A stretch of DNA of 64,000 nt from IMG/VR virus record IMGVR_UViG_3300013120_000738, positions 1-64,000 of that record. One strand, given 5' to 3'. Under the pieces are notes generated by a model. It did not search any database, was not told where the DNA came from, and was given only the letters and a program-made list of their open reading frames with translations. A program made the position numbers and the translations under genes. Of this stretch, positions 7,970-58,672 are shown piece by piece (the first letter of the stretch is position 1; every line of letters starts with the position of its first letter).

Positions 7970-9730
7970 CTAACGATCAGGAATAGTTCGAACATCTTTA
8001 GTATCTCCATTAGGATCTACAGCAGTTGGTAGGATTTCTACCTCTTCATCTAGTACCACTTGTGCGACATATAAGTTTCTACCATTAATCACTGACATCA
8101 CTCGAATGTTGATGTCAATTTCTTCACCATCCTTGGTGACCATTTTGCCAGAAACTTGTATGATGCCGCCTTTATTTAATTTTTCCAGAAGATCCGGATA
8201 CGTCATTCCTATTTGGTGTCTCTCGAATCTTCCTGGGGGGATTATTAGGTCAAGCTTTCTACCTATAGCTTCACCTTCTGTCCACCCAAGTAATTTTTGA
8301 GCACCATCATTCCACATAGCAATCGTACCATTCTTAGCATCACAAATAATATATGCTGTATCACTCATTTCAATTATTCTACGCCACTGATCTGCTCTCT
8401 TATTAGCCCTGTATATTGTTATGACTTGCCATAGGTCTTCCATCAAGAAAGTAACTTGCAAGACGTCATCTTGCGTATACGGTTTCTTCTTATTCCCAAG
8501 TCCTATAATTAGTCTACATTTCCCTTCAGTAAAAACTGGTACAGACATATATCGGCTCAATACTACTTTATGCTCTGCAGGGTGCTCTGCATTTTCATCC
8601 ATAGGCTTGCCACCAAAGTCATTGTTAACGTATGCCTTTTGTGTTCGAAATGGAATAGCCCATTGTGCTTCCCTTGCGATACCTTCTGCAATATCAAATT
8701 CAGCACGATCATTATGTATCTTATAATCCAACTGCATATTTTCAGACCAAACAGCTACTGTCACCGTATTTTCATCATTTTCATGAACATAGCCTATATA
8801 ACCATACCTACTACCAGTCAAGCGAATACATTCTTCTAGACAAAAATCCTTCAAACTCGCCTCAGTATGTGTACCAACATGGCTGTATAATTTAAGAGAA
8901 GCTTCTAATCTCTCTTGCGTTATACTAATCCTAACATCATTCACTTGTGCCACATGTAAACTATATCCAAGAAATGAAACCAAAAAAGCAATGATAAGAA
9001 TGATTATAGCAGATGATACTTTGCGTAATGTGTTTTCAGGCTTCCGCTTACGCGATTCATGTCTATCGTGGAGCCGCTTAAAAATCGGAGTAAGAGCACG
9101 AATGAACACAACAGAACCAACAAGTATGACCAAAACAGCAAAACTTGAAGCAATAACACCAGCCCTAATAAAAGGACTTCTGATTTCAGCAATATCCATT
9201 TTCGCCACTAATCCAAGATCGCAACAAATCATATCAACGGGTTCATATGCTGCAAGGACATATACACCTCTATAATCGCGACCTACCATGGAACCAGAGT
9301 GACCATTTAGAACCATTTGCATAGGCTCAGCATAATTAGATTTTAAAGCTATGATCTTACGATCTTCTACACCTGTATGGCGATGACTAAGTAGAAATAC
9401 TATATCACTACCTTCTCGTTCTGCTAATGTAAATTCTCCAGTTTTGCCAAAACCATTATATCTCCGATGTGCTTCAGTAATTTGAGTCAATGCTGCTTCA
9501 GATGCTTCATCTTGATCTTCAATTTGACTATGAGAGAATTTAGCTATTGACTCCATTAATCTGGCCTGGCTACGAGAAGTCTCAACTAATCTACGCTCAA
9601 CTTCATGTACTGCAGCATTATACGACAACACTATCGAGACAATACCAATAATCAATGACACACAAGTCATAACTATTAGTAAAAAATAAAATCTTTTACG
9701 ATCATCACGTATCATCGTTTGGCTCATCAT
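7970..9730 (-). CDS. Membrane sensor-like protein (TM-Cache-TM-TM-GAF-PAS) with no kinase or output domain
   Basis: Cache signature GRDYRGVYVLAAYEP...LGLVAKMD; GAF RYMSVPVF...GLGNKKKPY...DDV; PAS WNDGAQKLLGWTEGEAIG; the protein ends right after the PAS domain. Confidence 0.8.
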   Translation of the reverse strand: MMSQTMIRDDRKRFYFLLIVMTCVSLIIGIVSIVLSYNAAVHEVERRLVETSRSQARLMESIAKFSHSQIEDQDEASEAALTQITEAHRRYNGFGKTGEFTLAEREGSDIVFLLSHRHTGVEDRKIIALKSNYAEPMQMVLNGHSGSMVGRDYRGVYVLAAYEPVDMICCDLGLVAKMDIAEIRSPFIRAGVIASSFAVLVILVGSVVFIRALTPIFKRLHDRHESRKRKPENTLRKVSSAIIILIIAFLVSFLGYSLHVAQVNDVRISITQERLEASLKLYSHVGTHTEASLKDFCLEECIRLTGSRYGYIGYVHENDENTVTVAVWSENMQLDYKIHNDRAEFDIAEGIAREAQWAIPFRTQKAYVNNDFGGKPMDENAEHPAEHKVVLSRYMSVPVFTEGKCRLIIGLGNKKKPYTQDDVLQVTFLMEDLWQVITIYRANKRADQWRRIIEMSDTAYIICDAKNGTIAMWNDGAQKLLGWTEGEAIGRKLDLIIPPGRFERHQIGMTYPDLLEKLNKGGIIQVSGKMVTKDGEEIDINIRVMSVINGRNLYVAQVVLDEEVEILPTAVDPNGDTKDVRTIPDR

Positions 9731-10055
9731 CCTCCTCCGACTCATCAGGAACCGGTTCAATATGGAGATTTATCTTCCCCTGAAAGAAAATCTTCATTAA
9801 ATCAAGTGCCGTTGCCCCACCTATTCCAGCTAGCCCACTCACGGCTAACAAAAATGGTATATTTCCTTTGCCTTCAAAGTAATTATACCACATTAAAGCA
9901 ACAATTAATCCAATGATTCCACTATATAAGATAGACGATAAGACGGATCTGAGATTCAGATCTTCTTTACCTCTCAGTAAAGCTGCTAGTCCTCCAAGAG
10001 CTGCGACGCCGAAGGCCGACATGAAGACTAGTATATGAGTAAGAGTCCACACCAT
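9705..10055 (-). CDS. Putative holin (LydA-like, 3 TM)
   Basis: Small protein with three hydrophobic segments, GGLAA and GLAGIGGATALD patterns, and an acidic C-tail. Confidence 0.65.
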   Translation of the reverse strand: MVWTLTHILVFMSAFGVAALGGLAALLRGKEDLNLRSVLSSILYSGIIGLIVALMWYNYFEGKGNIPFLLAVSGLAGIGGATALDLMKIFFQGKINLHIEPVPDESEEDDEPNDDT

Positions 10056-10089
10056 AAGTTAACCCAGTCATAAGTTAACCCAGTCATAA
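10053..10089. repeat. Perfect 16-bp tandem duplication at the holin translation start
   Basis: cataagttaacccagt x2 plus cataa. Confidence 0.9.
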
Positions 10090-10090
10090 A

Positions 10091-10582
10091 TTATCCTACA
10101 CAAGCATGAAGGCACAAACCATACACGAAAAGCCCAAACAAACTAAGTATGATACACCAAAAGAACACACACCTCCAAAACCTAATTTTCCTCTCCTTCA
10201 GCAACAGATAAGCTTGAACAATAAGGGCATTTCCTATAAATTGCATATTCCCTTGACCCTTCCATAGGTATGTCAATGCTCCTGCATTATTAGCTTCCAG
10301 AATTAACTCAAGCTCTTCACTACCTGAAAAGACGACAACAGGGGGACTTTTATGTCGTCTATATCTAATATATTCAATAGTTTGTTTAGGTGTTGAATCT
10401 GGCAGATTCAGATCTAACAAAATCAAATCTGCATGTCTTTCACGTCCATGTGCATCATGTAGAGTACTAACAACCTCCAATGATATCAACTTATTCTTAT
10501 CATTGTGTTCTAATACTCGCTGCATTAGAGCGATATCGACTTGTAAGTCCTCGACCCACAATATCTTCATCGATTTCATCAT
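10091..10582 (-). CDS. Response-regulator receiver domain with C-terminal TM helix
   Basis: KILWVED, LILLDLNLPD (phospho-Asp), VVFSG, YLWK; C-terminal hydrophobic FFWCIILSLFGLFVYGLC. Confidence 0.85.
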   Translation of the reverse strand: MMKSMKILWVEDLQVDIALMQRVLEHNDKNKLISLEVVSTLHDAHGRERHADLILLDLNLPDSTPKQTIEYIRYRRHKSPPVVVFSGSEELELILEANNAGALTYLWKGQGNMQFIGNALIVQAYLLLKERKIRFWRCVFFWCIILSLFGLFVYGLCLHACVG

Positions 10583-33030: not shown

Positions 33031-33790
33031 TCAATACGATCCACTAAAAATTTTCCGCCTAACAGTAAACGGTCTCCAGGTCTGTCTGGCCTGGGGTTGA
33101 ACTCTTTTAAAACGTGGCAGATTCTCCGCATTATATTTATTATTTATATTAGTCACTCTATGGTTATGTACATTATCATGAATAGTAATCAAATCCTCAG
33201 AACCAATATCCCTTAAAGAACAAGAGGCAATGTTATGGGAATTCACCAAGTGATTCCTAAGATCTCCTGACCAACCCCATGTGCTACCAGGTAATCTAGT
33301 GATTGGTGGCAACTTCGCAAGATCTTTAGATTTCAAATGCTCAACTATTTCCTCATAACCAAGATAATTAGTCCTGAACCAACCACGACTCGTTTTCGTA
33401 TAAACAACAAGCTGCGGAACTATCATCTTCTTTACAAGATCACCAATCTTGATAGAGTGTTTCTTATCGATCCGCAATTCTGAAACATGCGATAAATCAT
33501 TCAGATCATCAAAATATTTCTCTTTTAGTCTATCACAAGGTATACAATTCGGGCCAGTCAACAATATATGGATAGGCTTCCCAGATTCCATCGCCGCAGC
33601 TCTAGCAACAGCATAATCAGATGGCAATTCCTTCTTTTCAGCAGTTAAACTCCAAGGATCTTTAAGACTCCATATAGATGTTGTAGTAACCAAAACTCCA
33701 TATAGATGTTGTAGTAACCAAACTCCACTCGTTACCGTACCCAACACCTATGACAAGGACGAATACGATAGAAAATATTACACCTCTCAT
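33031..33790 (-). pseudogene. Secreted thioredoxin-like protein, frameshifted by a 28-bp duplication
   Basis: SD AAGGAG + ATG 33790 gives a signal peptide but stops at codon 43; CIPC thioredoxin fold lies downstream in another frame. Confidence 0.7.
33668..33727. repeat. 28/27-bp tandem duplication
   Basis: ctccatatagatgttgtagtaaccaaa(a) x2 plus ctcca. Confidence 0.9.
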
Positions 33791-54647: not shown

Positions 54648-55499
54648 TTATATTTGAGATGGAGATAATTGTAGGAATGGTGGTAATAAATCCGTTTCTT
54701 CGGATACAAAACCCATCACTTTGTACTTACCAACTAACTCATCTATCTTTTTCTTGTCCCACCTGATTGGCTTTTGCATAGTTGACCAAACATACTTCCT
54801 ATTAGCAAGCAATCGTGGACACAATGATAAATCTATTAGTAATAAATTCTTATAATATAGCTGGCTACCCTGCGTTTGAAGAAATTCATTTAAGGATTGA
54901 ACACCTTCTAGCATAGCAGCCGATTTCTTAGGACCAATTCCACGATACCCATCAATTGAATCAGCCTTATCACCCATCAAGGCTTTTTGAGCAGCTGGAT
55001 TAATATGTGGGACGGACATCATTTCTTGTTTCTTCGGGTCCCACACTTCTACCGTTGGATACACAAATGGCATCTGTATCATATCGGAATCGGTAGAAAT
55101 AATTACACTATCACTAGGATGAATAGTATTCACAGCAGCATATATTAAGTCGTCTGCCTCCATCTGTGCCTTAAAATATTGGCGAACATTCATAAACGGA
55201 AGAATTTCCATCGCCACCCTAGTAGTAATGGCCAAATCCTCAGAAATATCCTCAACATATTGACTATTAGATCTATCTTTATATGTCTCCAGAACAAGTC
55301 TACGCCACACCTTTGTCTTCGGTGCATCCCAGAAAATGTGAACAGAAGATGGATTAAATCTGCCTATCCAAGATGATAACTGGCGTAGAAATATCACAAA
55401 ATAGTGATATTTAATAGTATGCCTTCTATCAGCCTTAACAGCATATATAGCCCTATAAAGGGCATTACGAGCATCAACAAGTAAGGCTTTATTAGGCAT
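54648..55499 (-). CDS. 5'-3' exonuclease / T4 RNase H-like
   Basis: LLVDA.N, WD, Y K..R, EADD, STDSD, GDKADSIDG..GIGPK. Confidence 0.9.
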   Translation of the reverse strand: MPNKALLVDARNALYRAIYAVKADRRHTIKYHYFVIFLRQLSSWIGRFNPSSVHIFWDAPKTKVWRRLVLETYKDRSNSQYVEDISEDLAITTRVAMEILPFMNVRQYFKAQMEADDLIYAAVNTIHPSDSVIISTDSDMIQMPFVYPTVEVWDPKKQEMMSVPHINPAAQKALMGDKADSIDGYRGIGPKKSAAMLEGVQSLNEFLQTQGSQLYYKNLLLIDLSLCPRLLANRKYVWSTMQKPIRWDKKKIDELVGKYKVMGFVSEETDLLPPFLQLSPSQI

Positions 55500-55508
55500 A
55501 ATAGGGGA

Positions 55509-55541
55509 GTGGGGCGGGAGGGAACAGGGCTCCCGCCCCAC
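55509..55541. terminator. Perfect 12-bp GC hairpin after ssb
   Basis: GTGGGGCGGGAG / CTCCCGCCCCAC. Confidence 0.6.
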
Positions 55542-55555
55542 GTGGCGAAAGGAGA

Positions 55556-56596
55556 TTAGTCTTCGTCGTCGAGTTGCTCGAGAAGAGCACTTATTTCTTC
55601 ACTCTCGACATCATCGCCCGCAGGCTCAGTATCGGATGTCTCCTCCTGAACAGGGGCCTCACCCGCCAAATCATCTGAGCTATCGTCAGTTGGCCCAGCC
55701 TCGGCCTCAGATTCCTCAACTGGCCCAGCCTCGGACTCATCCTCAACCGGCCCAGCCTCAGCCTCATCAGTAGGAGCCGTTTCATCCTTATCAAAGCCTC
55801 CAGATTCCTCGTGTTGGTCGTCAGCATTTGATAGGAATGCGAACATCTTCTTGATGTCTGCGGGATTCGGTTCTTCCACCTTCGAGAACAAGTTATGGCG
55901 TAACCTCAGAAGGGCTTTGATGCCCTTTTCATTTGGCTCGCCTTTCTTACCTACCATTGGGACGGGCTCGCCATCTTTCGTGACAAAGTGGCTTGTTTTG
56001 TAACTATTCTGCTTACCACTCTTTATCACTTCCAATTGGAAGATGAAGGCCGCATGTTCGTCGTAAAAGACGCCATGTGCTTCAGGTTCTTCTTCATCAC
56101 CCTTATCATCACGGTACAATGCAGCGGTCCAGATGTCGAGGCACGTCTTGGGGGCATTGTAGTACTTTACCTTACCGCGAAGTTCCTCAGGGTTGCCTTG
56201 CCAATGTGTGAAATAAATATTGACCATCGAGTATTTGGATGGCAACCAAATCTCTCTGATTTTCTTCCGTGCATCTTCGTCTTTCTCTTCCCTAAGGAGA
56301 TCAAGGCCGAATTGGCAAATCTCACACTCAGAATTGTCCCAGGACCGTGGGCATGGGTGTGGCCGCATATTGATCCAGTGATTGCCATGTTGCAAGAAGA
56401 AGTGATCCATAGTCTCCTTGGCAGTACCGGATTTGAGTACATCACCCTTCTGTATCGGCGGTAGGACAAAATACCGATACTTGATAGCCTCGGTCGTGCT
56501 TGTGGCTTTCGCGGGCTTGAACTCGTCCGGATCAGCGAATTTCCCGCCCATTTGAGACTTCAATTTCTTGCGGATTGCTTCTACATCGTAACTCAT
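55556..56596 (-). CDS. Single-stranded DNA-binding protein (T4 gp32-like)
   Basis: H...CP......C.IC zinc site, GKVKYY, F.L...K.G....Y..S.F, long acidic C-tail. Confidence 0.8.
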   Translation of the reverse strand: MSYDVEAIRKKLKSQMGGKFADPDEFKPAKATSTTEAIKYRYFVLPPIQKGDVLKSGTAKETMDHFFLQHGNHWINMRPHPCPRSWDNSECEICQFGLDLLREEKDEDARKKIREIWLPSKYSMVNIYFTHWQGNPEELRGKVKYYNAPKTCLDIWTAALYRDDKGDEEEPEAHGVFYDEHAAFIFQLEVIKSGKQNSYKTSHFVTKDGEPVPMVGKKGEPNEKGIKALLRLRHNLFSKVEEPNPADIKKMFAFLSNADDQHEESGGFDKDETAPTDEAEAGPVEDESEAGPVEESEAEAGPTDDSSDDLAGEAPVQEETSDTEPAGDDVESEEISALLEQLDDED

Positions 56597-56654
56597 TTTC
56601 AGTGCTCCAGTTTCAGCTTTTCAGTTTCATTTTCAGTTTCAGTTTCATTTTCAG
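56597..56654 (-). promoter_or_regulatory. Eight (C/A)TGAAA hexamer repeats around the ssb ribosome-binding site
   Basis: Minus strand: CTGAAA ATGAAA CTGAAA CTGAAA ATGAAA CTGAAAAG CTGAAA CTGGAGCA CTGAAA ATG. Confidence 0.75.
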
Positions 56655-57193
56655 GTGCTTTTGTCATACTCTTGTCGCTTGAACCCAGATAATGATCTGG
56701 CCAGTTCAGCTTTCATTTTCAACGCTTCGACCATGTGATACAATTTCCCGGTTTGCATTTGCAATGTCGCTAATTTTGCATCTGCTTCTTTTACACTATC
56801 CTCCGCTTCTAGTACCATTTTGACTTGATCTGCAGTAAGCCTTACATTATCCTTGGCAGCGTCATCCTGTACTTTCTTGATCGCCTTACCCTTCGCAGCC
56901 TTTAGGCCCCTCTCCGCAAGAGTCGCCCAAAATCTACTCTCCGAGTAAACCGCCGACCAGAATGCATATTGACCAGGAAGGTCTTGCATCTGATCCTCAA
57001 GAATATCATAATCAAGGTCGAGCTCCGGGAGCATATCGACCTCAACTCGCATCTTTTTCGGGAGCCCAGGTCTAATTTCCCTAACTGGATCATCAACCGC
57101 TAATTTGACCTTGAATCGAAATAATGTCGATTCAACCAAATCCACAGGAATATTCTCATCAATCCACTTAGGTCTTTTCTGCTTCTTGCTCAT
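56651..57193 (-). CDS. UvsY-like recombination mediator
   Basis: L.+D...LE.....P..YA.W helical pattern, ...KAE..RSL; adjacent to ssb. Confidence 0.6.
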   Translation of the reverse strand: MSKKQKRPKWIDENIPVDLVESTLFRFKVKLAVDDPVREIRPGLPKKMRVEVDMLPELDLDYDILEDQMQDLPGQYAFWSAVYSESRFWATLAERGLKAAKGKAIKKVQDDAAKDNVRLTADQVKMVLEAEDSVKEADAKLATLQMQTGKLYHMVEALKMKAELARSLSGFKRQEYDKST

Positions 57194-57470
57194 CAGGTGG
57201 GCTCCAGGCATTCATATTAAAGCCCTGATAATCGTCCAATACACCATCGTCTGTGTCATTCTGCATAGTATTATCTGGTGGTTGTAACGATTGCCAGGCA
57301 TTTCTCTGGAATGTAGGTTGAATTCTTTGTTTAGCTTGTCCTATAATTACTGCTCCAGCCGCTTTCTCAGCAATTTTCACCTTAGCACGATCTATCTTCT
57401 TAGCCTTTTTCTTCTTCCTCTGGAGACGTCTTTTTGCCTTCTCACGTAATTTATTTTCTTTGCTCTTCAT
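57168..57470 (-). CDS. Basic hypothetical protein
   Basis: Lys-rich 100-aa ORF. Confidence 0.55.
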   Translation of the reverse strand: MKSKENKLREKAKRRLQRKKKKAKKIDRAKVKIAEKAAGAVIIGQAKQRIQPTFQRNAWQSLQPPDNTMQNDTDDGVLDDYQGFNMNAWSPPDEQEAEKT

Positions 57471-58672
57471 CTATAGACTTTCAATAATTTCCATTTCTTC
57501 CATTTCTTACCAACACTAACCTTAACCGGAAACGAAGGATTATCTTCCAGTAAACCGTCAAATGGGTGGAGCATGACATCTGCCACCATATCAACAGTAT
57601 CACCAATCTTATTACGAGGGCTTGAAACTACTAAGGAATCATGGATTTCTGTGATAAGTCTCGTCCCTATCTCGTCCCAAATCTTCCTAACAACTCTCTG
57701 CATAGCATGAGCTACAGAGCCTTGCATGACACCATTCAACACAGCGAGTTGATTCTTTGCATGGGCTAATCGGAATCTACGACCTAATATTGTCTGAAGA
57801 GAAGTTGAAGGACCATCCAATCTGGATTTGCACTTCATAATCCACTCACCTAAACCAGGGTATATATCACTTAGAGCTTCACTATGAAAATCCATCGAAT
57901 TTATAGATTTCAATAGAAATAACTTAGCCTCATCCCTAGTTATTTGATCATTTGAATCTTTATTTATCTCTTCCATCATTGTTGTATATGGATCTGATTT
58001 TTGGAAAGCCATCGATAATTTCGCATCATTAGCCAATAATGATGCAACACGAATATCTGCACAGATCCAATCAAAATGAATTAGTATATCACTATCAGGA
58101 AATCTCGGAGACCAAACAGGAAATTCCTCGCTTAATCCTTGTATATTATATCCTACTGTTTTACTTCTACCAGAGAACGTCCTTTGTGAATAAACCGGCC
58201 GTACCCTTTCATGACCGACCATCAAACCAGCACGCTGCAAATCCTCATAAACAATAGCAGCATCAGCTATCAATCTCTGATAATCACGTACCTTTTGAGC
58301 CTGCATCCTCTCTAGTACATGCCGAACAGCTAATATATCCGCGTGTTTAGACTTACCAGGCTTAATATTTGGTAAATGCAGATCATATACTTTATATGGT
58401 AGATCAAGTGGAAGTTTGAAAGTTCTAATATGGGCCTTAAAATCTGACAAAATTATTTCTGCTCCTTTAGAAGCAGCCGTTATAATTATTTTGCGTATTT
58501 CATCTATTCTACTAGATATATCTCCTACTATTTTACCCTCTCCAGACCTAAATAATTCCTTTATTATAATCTTATCGCCTATTGCGATACCACAAATACT
58601 AGGCCGCTCCCTAGCACCTTTAGGAGGTTCGAAGATTGTACAAACATAAACTCTGCGCATCGTTCTAATCAA
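57467..58672 (-). CDS. Minimal family A DNA polymerase (polymerase domain only, divergent motifs)
   Basis: SGR...NIQ, motif A FDWICADIR, motif B RDEAKLFLL...N, QGS.A, motif C IHDSL. Confidence 0.8.
   Translation of the reverse strand: MIRTMRRVYVCTIFEPPKGARERPSICGIAIGDKIIIKELFRSGEGKIVGDISSRIDEIRKIIITAASKGAEIILSDFKAHIRTFKLPLDLPYKVYDLHLPNIKPGKSKHADILAVRHVLERMQAQKVRDYQRLIADAAIVYEDLQRAGLMVGHERVRPVYSQRTFSGRSKTVGYNIQGLSEEFPVWSPRFPDSDILIHFDWICADIRVASLLANDAKLSMAFQKSDPYTTMMEEINKDSNDQITRDEAKLFLLKSINSMDFHSEALSDIYPGLGEWIMKCKSRLDGPSTSLQTILGRRFRLAHAKNQLAVLNGVMQGSVAHAMQRVVRKIWDEIGTRLITEIHDSLVVSSPRNKIGDTVDMVADVMLHPFDGLLEDNPSFPVKVSVGKKWKKWKLLKVYR

What the first reader, a model, noticed from the sequence alone, without database searches (positions are those of the whole stretch)
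56594..56654. Hexamer-repeat leader of ssb: analogue of the T4 gene 32 autogenous operator
Seen: the 55-nt intergenic space is almost entirely eight (C/A)UGAAA units surrounding the GGAG SD, with little pairing potential. No such repeat occurs before other genes in the window. Established: T4 gp32 represses its own translation by binding cooperatively to an unstructured A/U-rich repeated leader. Inference: a conserved or convergent ssDNA-sensing feedback switch with a different repeat unit, which also supports the SSB call.
Basis: partly seen in the sequence, partly recalled or inferred. Interest (0 to 1): 0.65.

Follow-up and report, generated by a model that had tools for sequence, protein, structure and literature searches.

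The report
Hexamer-repeat leader of phage SSB gene
The short untranslated stretch in front of a giant phage's single-stranded-DNA-binding protein gene is made of eight copies of a six-base unit. It most likely works like the known phage T4 gene 32 feedback switch, and related phages have built similar repeat leaders from quite different units.

Summary
Between the stop of a UvsY-like gene and the ATG of a gp32-family SSB gene (minus strand) lie 54 nt holding eight (C/A)TGAAA units. Six are contiguous, one lies on each side of the GGAG Shine-Dalgarno, and the last abuts the ATG. About 0.06 units are expected by chance. It is the only multi-copy short tandem array in the 227.7-kb phage record.

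The SSB call is confirmed by Pfam gp32 and by a predicted fold whose best matches are the T4 and RB69 gp32 cores. The leader RNA is predicted to be unstructured and is 52% A.

Among 48 distinct SSB leaders of relatives, 12 are significant tandem repeats, against 5 of 173 other intergenic gaps. Every lineage uses a different unit. The T4 gene 32 operator scores as a weaker tandem repeat by the same statistic.

No pseudoknot, promoter, terminator, Rfam family or copy-number variation was found.

Best reading (about 0.5): an unstructured repeat lattice over the ribosome-binding site on which the SSB binds cooperatively to repress its own translation. This would be a T4-operator analogue without the pseudoknot. 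The main rival is a ribosome standby site or translational enhancer, and the two are compatible. Function is untested. I rate it a new variant of a known kind, of moderate interest.

The parts
56597..56654 (-). Array of eight (C/A)UGAAA hexamers. Six are contiguous at 56619-56654, one lies at 56611-56616 and one at 56597-56602. This is the proposed unstructured operator lattice.
   Evidence: Predicted unpaired.
56651..56653 (-). TGA stop codon of the UvsY-like gene. It is part of the first repeat unit and is the first of six in-frame TGA codons spaced 6 nt apart.
56605..56608 (-). GGAG Shine-Dalgarno, 8 nt upstream of the ATG, flanked by repeat units 7 and 8.
55556..56596 (-). gp32-family SSB gene (346 aa). 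It has an N-terminal basic helix, a His/Cys3 zinc site (H73, C82, C91, C94), an OB-fold core and a long acidic C-terminal tail.
   Evidence: Pfam PF08804, E 7.6e-7, above the cut-off. AF2 model with pLDDT 81. Foldseek best match 1GPC, E 1.6e-10, TM 0.74. Invariant H/C columns. The zinc cysteines align with those of T4 gp32.
56651..57211 (-). Upstream UvsY-like gene. The longest ORF is 186 aa; JGI aa. It is probably co-transcribed with the SSB gene.
   Evidence: phrog_231 UvsY-like, E 6e-4. Orthologues in relatives carry PF11056 UvsY as a weak hit. No terminator or sigma-70-like promoter lies between the two genes on this strand.

Best explanation
The 54-nt intercistronic leader is transcribed together with the UvsY-like gene. 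As RNA it forms an A-rich, structure-free lattice of eight (C/A)UGAAA units that runs from the upstream stop codon across the Shine-Dalgarno to the AUG. The inferred mechanism is as follows. When free SSB exceeds the available single-stranded DNA, SSB monomers bind this lattice cooperatively. About 7-8 monomers would fit if the site size is about 7 nt, as for T4 gp32; that figure is from my own knowledge, not a tool result. The bound SSB covers the ribosome-binding site and blocks initiation. ssDNA, the preferred ligand, titrates the protein away and restores translation. This is the mechanism shown for T4 gene 32, but here with a different repeat unit and without the 5' pseudoknot nucleation site. 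What is shown: the repeat anatomy, the lack of predicted structure, the gp32 identity of the protein, and the recurrence of repeat-built, unstructured leaders specifically in front of this gene family. What is inferred: RNA binding by this SSB, repression, and relief by ssDNA.
For: (1) The repeat is real and unique in the genome.
(2) The protein is a gp32 homologue with the parts needed for cooperative binding: a conserved basic N-terminal helix, a zinc site, an OB core and an acidic tail.
(3) The T4 operator is described as a stretch of more than 40 nt with little structure and several UUAAA/UAAA repeats overlapping the ribosome-binding site, and both elements are reported essential for repression (PMC535899, PMC3014915). 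Read directly, the T4 leader is a TTAAA tandem array abutting the Shine-Dalgarno. It scores 12 (p = 0.0025) by my statistic, against 20 for this window, 22 for L148 and 18 for L073.
(4) The feature is specific to this gene. 12 of 48 distinct SSB leaders of 25 nt or more in this clade have tandem repeats at shuffle p <= 0.01, against 5 of 173 other intergenic gaps of the same loci (Fisher 8.6e-6). One of those 5 controls is really an SSB leader read on the other strand.
(5) SSB leaders are less structured than control gaps (median MFE/nt -0.086 against -0.173, p = 1e-4) and richer in A (0.40 against 0.32, p = 8e-5).
(6) Units differ between lineages, even between sisters, and the repeat state needs 8-10 changes on the SSB tree. 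That pattern fits a sequence-independent lattice binder and not a sequence-specific regulator.
(7) The array is longer (35-58 nt) than the 16-18 nt at which standby tails reach their full effect (PMC5934652).
(8) The leader is identical in four assemblies from different samples and in a contig from another study, with no indels.
Against: There is no functional data of any kind.
The pseudoknot that gives T4 its specificity is absent.
The leader is A-rich (A+U 67%) but carries a G and a C in almost every unit, unlike the nearly pure A/U T4 tract.
16 of 64 distinct leaders in the clade are shorter than 25 nt, and many others have no repeat, so the feature is dispensable.
Unstructured, A-rich leaders are also expected for any highly translated gene.
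The lack of structure follows from composition alone (z = 0.06).
Confidence: 0.5

Rival explanations
1. Ribosome standby site or translational enhancer. The unstructured repeat tract only recruits 30S subunits (ribosomal protein S1), so that a protein needed in stoichiometric amounts is made at a very high rate. There is no feedback by SSB. Tandem duplication of a unit that cannot pair with itself is simply the easiest evolutionary route to a long single-stranded tract.
For: The leader is single-stranded and A-rich. Single-stranded CA- or AU-repeat tails strongly raise translation in E. coli (PMC5934652). Several relatives use CAA- or ACA-rich units (L073, L084, L094). The unit sequence is not conserved.
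Against: The standby effect reaches its maximum at 16-18 nt, but these arrays span 30-58 nt. No other gene of the 227-kb record has such a leader, and only about 3% of other gaps in relatives do. A general enhancer should also appear before other highly expressed genes. This reading is compatible with the operator reading and does not exclude it.
Confidence: 0.25
2. Neutral slippage product. A non-coding spacer has expanded by replication slippage and has no function of its own.
For: The perfect 18-nt duplication inside the array shows recent duplication. Units turn over quickly between lineages. Many relatives do without a spacer.
Against: Repeats are 8-10 times more frequent in SSB leaders than in other gaps of the same genomes. 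There is no copy-number difference among four assemblies and one further contig. The array is placed exactly from the stop codon to the AUG, with the Shine-Dalgarno kept intact.
Confidence: 0.1
3. Binding site for another factor. This could be a ring-shaped or multimeric RNA-binding protein that reads UGA or GAAA triplets at fixed spacing (TRAP-, Hfq-, CsrA- or RegA-like). It could also be a DNA-level element such as repeated regulator sites, a promoter or an origin unwinding element.
For: Six UGA triplets with exact 3-nt spacers resemble a TRAP-type site layout. The phage encodes a CsrA homologue elsewhere in its genome.
Against: No TRAP, Hfq or RegA homologue was found in the held 63% of the genome. 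The RegA search rang in no control genome, so it is uninformative. CsrA needs GGA motifs, and the leader has only the one inside the Shine-Dalgarno. Repeat periods in relatives vary (6, 7, 8, 13, 14), which does not suit a protein of fixed geometry. The motif occurs nowhere else in the genome, so there is no regulon. There is no promoter-like or terminator-like site on this strand and no Rfam match.
Confidence: 0.1
4. Upstream mini-ORF. The two in-frame ATGs inside the array open an 11-codon ORF (MKLKLKMKLKS) that ends 5 nt before the GGAG. It could relay ribosomes from the UvsY-like gene to the SSB gene.
For: The first ATG lies 2 nt after the upstream stop codon, so re-initiation is conceivable.
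Against: There is no Shine-Dalgarno before it. The repeat leaders of L073, L009, L024, L084 and L094 contain no ATG at all.
Confidence: 0.03

Closest known systems
Phage T4 gene 32 autogenous translational operator (also T2 and RB69)
   Same: It is the leader of a gp32-family SSB gene. It is a tract of more than 40 nt without structure, built from short repeated units, lying directly 5' of and around the Shine-Dalgarno and reaching the AUG. The protein has a basic N-terminus, a zinc-containing OB core and an acidic tail.
   Different: The unit is (C/A)UGAAA at period 6 in eight copies, against UUAAA/UAAA at period 5 in about 3.5 copies. The tract is A-rich, not A+U-rich. No 5' pseudoknot is present. 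The upstream gene is UvsY-like, where T4 has 59/segG. The protein is only about 16% identical to T4 gp32 in the structural alignment. Function is untested.
Phage RB49 gene 32 leader
   Same: Repeated units are present and no pseudoknot is detectable (reported in PMC535899). Autoregulation is untested there too.
   Different: RB49 keeps the T4-type UUAA(A) unit. Here the unit is unrelated.
Ribosome standby tails and translational enhancers (CA- or AU-repeat 5' tails; MS2 coat standby site)
   Same: A single-stranded repetitive tract immediately 5' of a ribosome-binding site.
   Different: The known effect is complete at 16-18 nt and overcomes a structured ribosome-binding site. Here the tract is 54 nt and the ribosome-binding site is itself open.
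TRAP binding sites in Bacillus trp and related leaders
   Same: Triplets repeated with 2-3-nt spacers in an mRNA leader that overlaps the translation start.
   Different: TRAP reads GAG or UAG, not UGA. No TRAP homologue is present. Relatives use other periods.

Membership tests
T4-type gene 32 autogenous translational operator | Lies in the 5' leader of a gp32-family SSB gene and overlaps its ribosome-binding site | tested here: met
   Pfam gp32. The fold matches 1GPC and 2A1K. The units flank GGAG and abut the ATG.
T4-type gene 32 autogenous translational operator | A tract of 40 nt or more with little or no secondary structure | tested here: met
   MFE -3 kcal/mol over 81 nt. The leader is unpaired in the 174-nt fold. 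Across the clade, SSB leaders are less structured than control gaps.
T4-type gene 32 autogenous translational operator | Several copies of a short repeated element (UUAAA/UAAA in T4) | tested here: met
   Met in kind: eight (C/A)UGAAA units. The T4 sequence motif itself is absent.
T4-type gene 32 autogenous translational operator | 5' RNA pseudoknot as nucleation site | tested here: not met
   A simple H-type pseudoknot search recovered the T4 pseudoknot as a positive control and found nothing at -140..-50 or -100..-1 here. The only nearby hairpin, CCAGAU/AUCUGG inside the UvsY-like coding region, is not kept in the sister L073 (sequence). RB49 is reported to lack the pseudoknot too.
T4-type gene 32 autogenous translational operator | A+U-rich composition | tested here: inconclusive
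   A 52%, U 15%, G 20%, C 13%. A+U is 67% against 57% for the genome. The tract is A-rich but not free of G and C.
T4-type gene 32 autogenous translational operator | SSB binds the leader cooperatively and represses translation; ssDNA relieves it | not testable with these tools
   This needs protein-RNA binding and reporter assays.
Ribosome standby site / translational enhancer | Single-stranded tract 5' of the ribosome-binding site | tested here: met
Ribosome standby site / translational enhancer | Raises the translation rate independently of any repressor | not testable with these tools
   This needs reporter assays.
Slippage-prone contingency repeat | Copy number varies among near-identical genomes | tested here: not met
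   The leader is identical in L070, L071, L072 and the window, and in a 267-nt contig of run X2. No indels were reported. The sample is small.
TRAP-, Hfq- or CsrA-type leader site | The matching protein is encoded or its motif is present (GAG/UAG triplets; ARN triplets; two or more GGA) | tested here: not met
   No TrpBP or Hfq homologue. A CsrA homologue is present, but the leader has a single GGA.

The most novel reading that the evidence does not exclude
Repeat-built leaders may be a general design for gp32-family SSB genes that is regenerated again and again. The regulator is a sequence-independent, cooperative lattice binder, so the operator needs only to be long and unstructured. Lineages would then keep replacing it by tandem amplification of whatever short unit cannot pair with itself: UUAAA in T4, AAGUAAAU in Pm5461, UUUCAGCUA in a Campylobacter phage, and UGAAAM, ACAUCACA, UGAAUGYY, GUUAAAA and 13-nt units in this giant-phage clade. 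This would be a regulatory RNA conserved in kind and position but not in sequence, and therefore invisible to covariance or homology searches.
Probability: 0.35. Interest if true: 0.65.

Novelty: new variant of a known kind. Interest (0 to 1): 0.5.

Why it matters
If the reading is right, autogenous control of SSB synthesis, so far a T4 textbook case, extends to a very distant, uncultured clade of giant marine and freshwater phages. The SSB of this clade is not detectable by BLAST from T4.

It would also show that the operator can be rebuilt from unrelated repeat units. That supports the old model in which specificity comes from an unusually long unstructured lattice and not from sequence.

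In practice, such leaders give a simple annotation mark for SSB genes. They also offer a set of natural operator variants for testing how cooperative ssDNA-binding proteins tell mRNA from DNA.

Tried and rejected
- tblastn of the SSB against 50,697 phage records found no match. A profile search of PDB sequences also found none. The fold search was needed to confirm the SSB call.
- The Rfam scan of 55400-57400 gave only chance-level hits.
- The sigma-70 promoter and intrinsic terminator scan found nothing on the minus strand at the leader.
- A pseudoknot and a conserved upstream hairpin were not found.
- The mini-ORF in the array is not conserved in relatives.
- I considered that the repeat period might equal the SSB site size. 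Leader periods are 6-9 and 13-14, but control repeats show the same periods, so I make no claim.
- I looked for copy-number variation and found none.
- Public reads: all four runs were available only as contigs. One DNA contig spans the leader unchanged. The single RNA-library contig covers only 56684-56837 inside the UvsY-like gene, so nothing can be said about transcript ends or expression of the leader. Short 33-36-nt contigs, and one 8.5-kb contig with unlike flanks, that hit the array come from other sequences and are not evidence.
- RegA, TRAP and Hfq homologues were not found in the held 63% of the genome. The RegA search rang in no control genome and is therefore uninformative.
- The motif GTATTTAA, seen upstream of SSB in some relatives, is not enriched in this window.

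Full report
**What is there**

The genes of this region lie on the minus strand. A 186-aa ORF (56651-57211) ends with TGA at 56651-56653. A 346-aa ORF (55556-56596) starts with ATG at 56594-56596. The 54 nt between them, together with the stop codon and the base before it, hold eight (C/A)TGAAA units.

Six units are contiguous (56619-56654) and include a perfect 18-nt duplication. One follows after AG (56611-56616). The last (56597-56602) abuts the ATG. GGAG (56605-56608) sits between units 7 and 8, 8 nt before the ATG.

From the rest of the window about 0.06 units are expected in such a span, and no other 61-nt window holds more than 3. TGAAAMTGAAA occurs 6 times against 0.14 in shuffles.

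The window belongs to an IMG/VR virus record of 227,725 bp, estimated 63% complete, so this is a giant phage. The three-unit pattern occurs nowhere else in it. A scan of the whole record for tandem repeats of period 4-18 found only four loci. This one is the second strongest and the only one with more than three copies. Only the spacer length differs: 54 nt, not 55.

**The flanking genes**

The downstream protein matches Pfam gp32 (PF08804, E 7.6e-7, above the curated cut-off). It has no BLAST-level relative among 50,697 phage records and no sequence-level match in the PDB. An AlphaFold2 model built on 36 homologues (mean pLDDT 81) has as its only significant PDB matches the T4 gp32 core (1GPC, E 1.6e-10, target TM 0.74), RB69 gp32, and the gp32-Dda complex.

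Invariant H73, C82, C91 and C94 align with the zinc ligands of T4 gp32. The N-terminus carries a conserved basic helix (IRKKLK). The last 90 or so residues are strongly acidic and disordered. This is the three-part gp32 architecture.

The upstream gene is weakly UvsY-like (phrog_231, E 6e-4; PF11056 as a weak hit on orthologues). No promoter-like or terminator-like site lies between the genes on this strand, so co-transcription is likely.

**The RNA**

The leader is 52% A, 20% G, 15% U and 13% C. Its MFE is -3 kcal/mol over 81 nt, and it stays unpaired when 174 nt are folded. Shuffles fold equally weakly, so the absence of structure comes from composition and from the direct, not inverted, nature of the repeats. 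No Rfam family matches.

A simple H-type pseudoknot search recovered the known T4 gene 32 pseudoknot as a positive control. It found none upstream of or within this leader. The one hairpin in the UvsY-like 3' coding region is not kept in the sister phage.

**Relatives**

The word search found 117 homologues at 34-66% identity. Scans of viral and metagenome contigs, plus look-ups by protein, gave about 140 loci. Four assemblies that encode the identical protein have the identical leader. A contig from a run of another study spans it without any difference. No copy-number variation was seen.

The sister phage L073 (70% identity over the first 260 SSB residues) has, in the same place, 3.5 copies of ACATCACA starting at its stop codon. 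L148 (65%) has six 8-nt TGAATGYY units, which share only a TGAA core with the window. Other lineages use a 13-nt unit in four copies (L009), GTTAAAA (L024), AAATTCG (L033), CAA-rich units (L084, L094), and others.

Other relatives have a hairpin followed by an unstructured tail (L006, L010, L074, L075, L144) or almost no spacer (16 of 64 distinct leaders are shorter than 25 nt).

**Statistics across the clade**

I scored each sequence by a local diagonal score (periods 4-18) against 400 dinucleotide-preserving shuffles. At p <= 0.01, 12 of 48 distinct SSB leaders of 25 nt or more are tandem repeats, against 5 of 173 other intergenic gaps of the same loci (Fisher 8.6e-6; Mann-Whitney on z-scores 3.7e-5). 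One of the five controls is in fact an SSB leader read on the other strand.

On an SSB tree the repeat state is scattered and needs 8-10 changes, and sisters carry different units.

The last 50 nt of SSB leaders are less structured than those of control gaps (median MFE/nt -0.086 against -0.173, p = 1e-4). They are richer in A and poorer in U and G.

**Comparison with T4**

The literature describes the T4 operator as a 5' pseudoknot followed by a less structured stretch of more than 40 nt. That stretch holds several UUAAA/UAAA repeats and overlaps the ribosome-binding site. Both elements are reported essential, and binding is thought to spread cooperatively from the pseudoknot. RB49 appears to lack the pseudoknot but keeps the repeats (PMC535899, PMC3014915).

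Read directly, the T4 leader is a TTAAA tandem array next to the Shine-Dalgarno. It scores 12 (p = 0.0025) by my statistic, lower than the window (20), L148 (22) or L073 (18).

Among twelve other T4-related phages sampled across the range of gp32 similarity, several show their own units: Pm5461 (p = 0.0125), Campylobacter phage F365 (p = 0.01), and CC31 and KP15 (about 0.05). The rest are not significant.

**Interpretation**

The anatomy, its specificity for this gene, and the turnover of unit sequence fit best an operator for a sequence-independent, cooperative lattice binder. That binder would be the SSB itself, as in T4. I put this at about 0.5.

The main rival is a pure standby site or translational enhancer (about 0.25). 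It is supported by experiments with CA- and AU-repeat tails (PMC5934652). It is weakened because those effects are complete at 16-18 nt and because no other gene of this phage has such a leader. The two readings are compatible.

The remaining readings together take the rest:
- Neutral slippage.
- Another RNA-binding protein. TRAP, Hfq and RegA homologues were not found. A CsrA homologue is present, but the leader has only one GGA.
- A DNA-level element.
- The 11-codon mini-ORF, which is not conserved.

Membership in the T4 operator family fails on the pseudoknot and cannot be tested on the defining function. The claim is therefore 'works like', not 'is a member of'.

**Limits**

- All functional statements are inferences.
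- Control gaps were defined by crude ORF calling.
- Leaders from related phages are not fully independent, although their units are.
- The public runs were available only as contigs, so they say nothing about transcript ends or expression.

Noticed in passing
window 55692-55768 (minus strand, inside the SSB gene): A 27-nt tandem repeat of 2.7 copies encodes part of the acidic C-terminal tail of the SSB (EAGPVE(D/E)ES-like 9-aa units). The tail, like the leader, has grown by tandem duplication.
   Followed up: partly
window 56619-56653 (minus strand): The six contiguous units place six TGA codons in the reading frame of the UvsY-like gene, at every second codon. The SSB ATG is in that same frame. 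In L148 the 8-nt period puts TGA in all three frames. This may be a by-product of the repeat, or it may insulate against read-through.
   Followed up: partly
window 10053-10093: The strongest tandem repeat of the whole genome is a 16-nt unit (CATAAGTTAACCCAGT on the + strand) in 2.6 copies. It lies at the junction of two minus-strand ORFs (10091-10582 and 9705-10055) and overlaps the start of the downstream one.
   Followed up: no
window 33667-33727: A 28-nt tandem repeat of 2.2 copies with 97% matches. Its context was not examined.
   Followed up: no
G000:C1:128307-128462 (+), outside the window; locus L162: The phage encodes a clear CsrA homologue (PF02599, E 1.9e-27, 85-aa open frame). A phage-borne global translational regulator would be worth its own study. 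Several relatives' SSB leaders carry two or three GGA motifs (L033, L095, L130, L143), but this window's leader has only one.
   Followed up: no
window 57467-58672 (minus strand): A 401-aa ORF matches only the C-terminal third of the family A DNA polymerase profile (positions 246-380 of 381). This suggests a split or highly diverged PolA. The gene order PolA fragment, small ORF, UvsY-like, SSB, 5'-3' exonuclease is conserved in relatives.
   Followed up: no
relatives L015, L018, L060-L062, L064, L088, L118, L143, about 55-80 nt upstream of the SSB ATG: A shared motif GTATTTAA (or GTATTTTA) precedes the SSB gene where no UvsY-like gene lies directly upstream. It is a candidate phage promoter. 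It is not enriched in this window (4 found against 3.6 expected).
   Followed up: partly
relatives L006, L010, L074, L075, L144; also L063-L068: An alternative leader design: a GC-rich hairpin directly after the upstream stop codon, followed by a 20-45-nt unstructured tail that runs to the Shine-Dalgarno. This recalls the two-part T4 operator. A distant subclade shares a conserved hairpin, GCAGAAAATGGC-loop-GCCATCTGC.
   Followed up: partly
window 55913-55961: A contig of run X2 differs from the window at 8 positions within 49 nt of the SSB gene, 7 of them 3 nt apart. This looks like a patch of third-codon-position changes from a co-occurring strain or a recombination tract. The IMG/VR contig 3300009127_000001 also begins near this point of the gene.
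   Followed up: no
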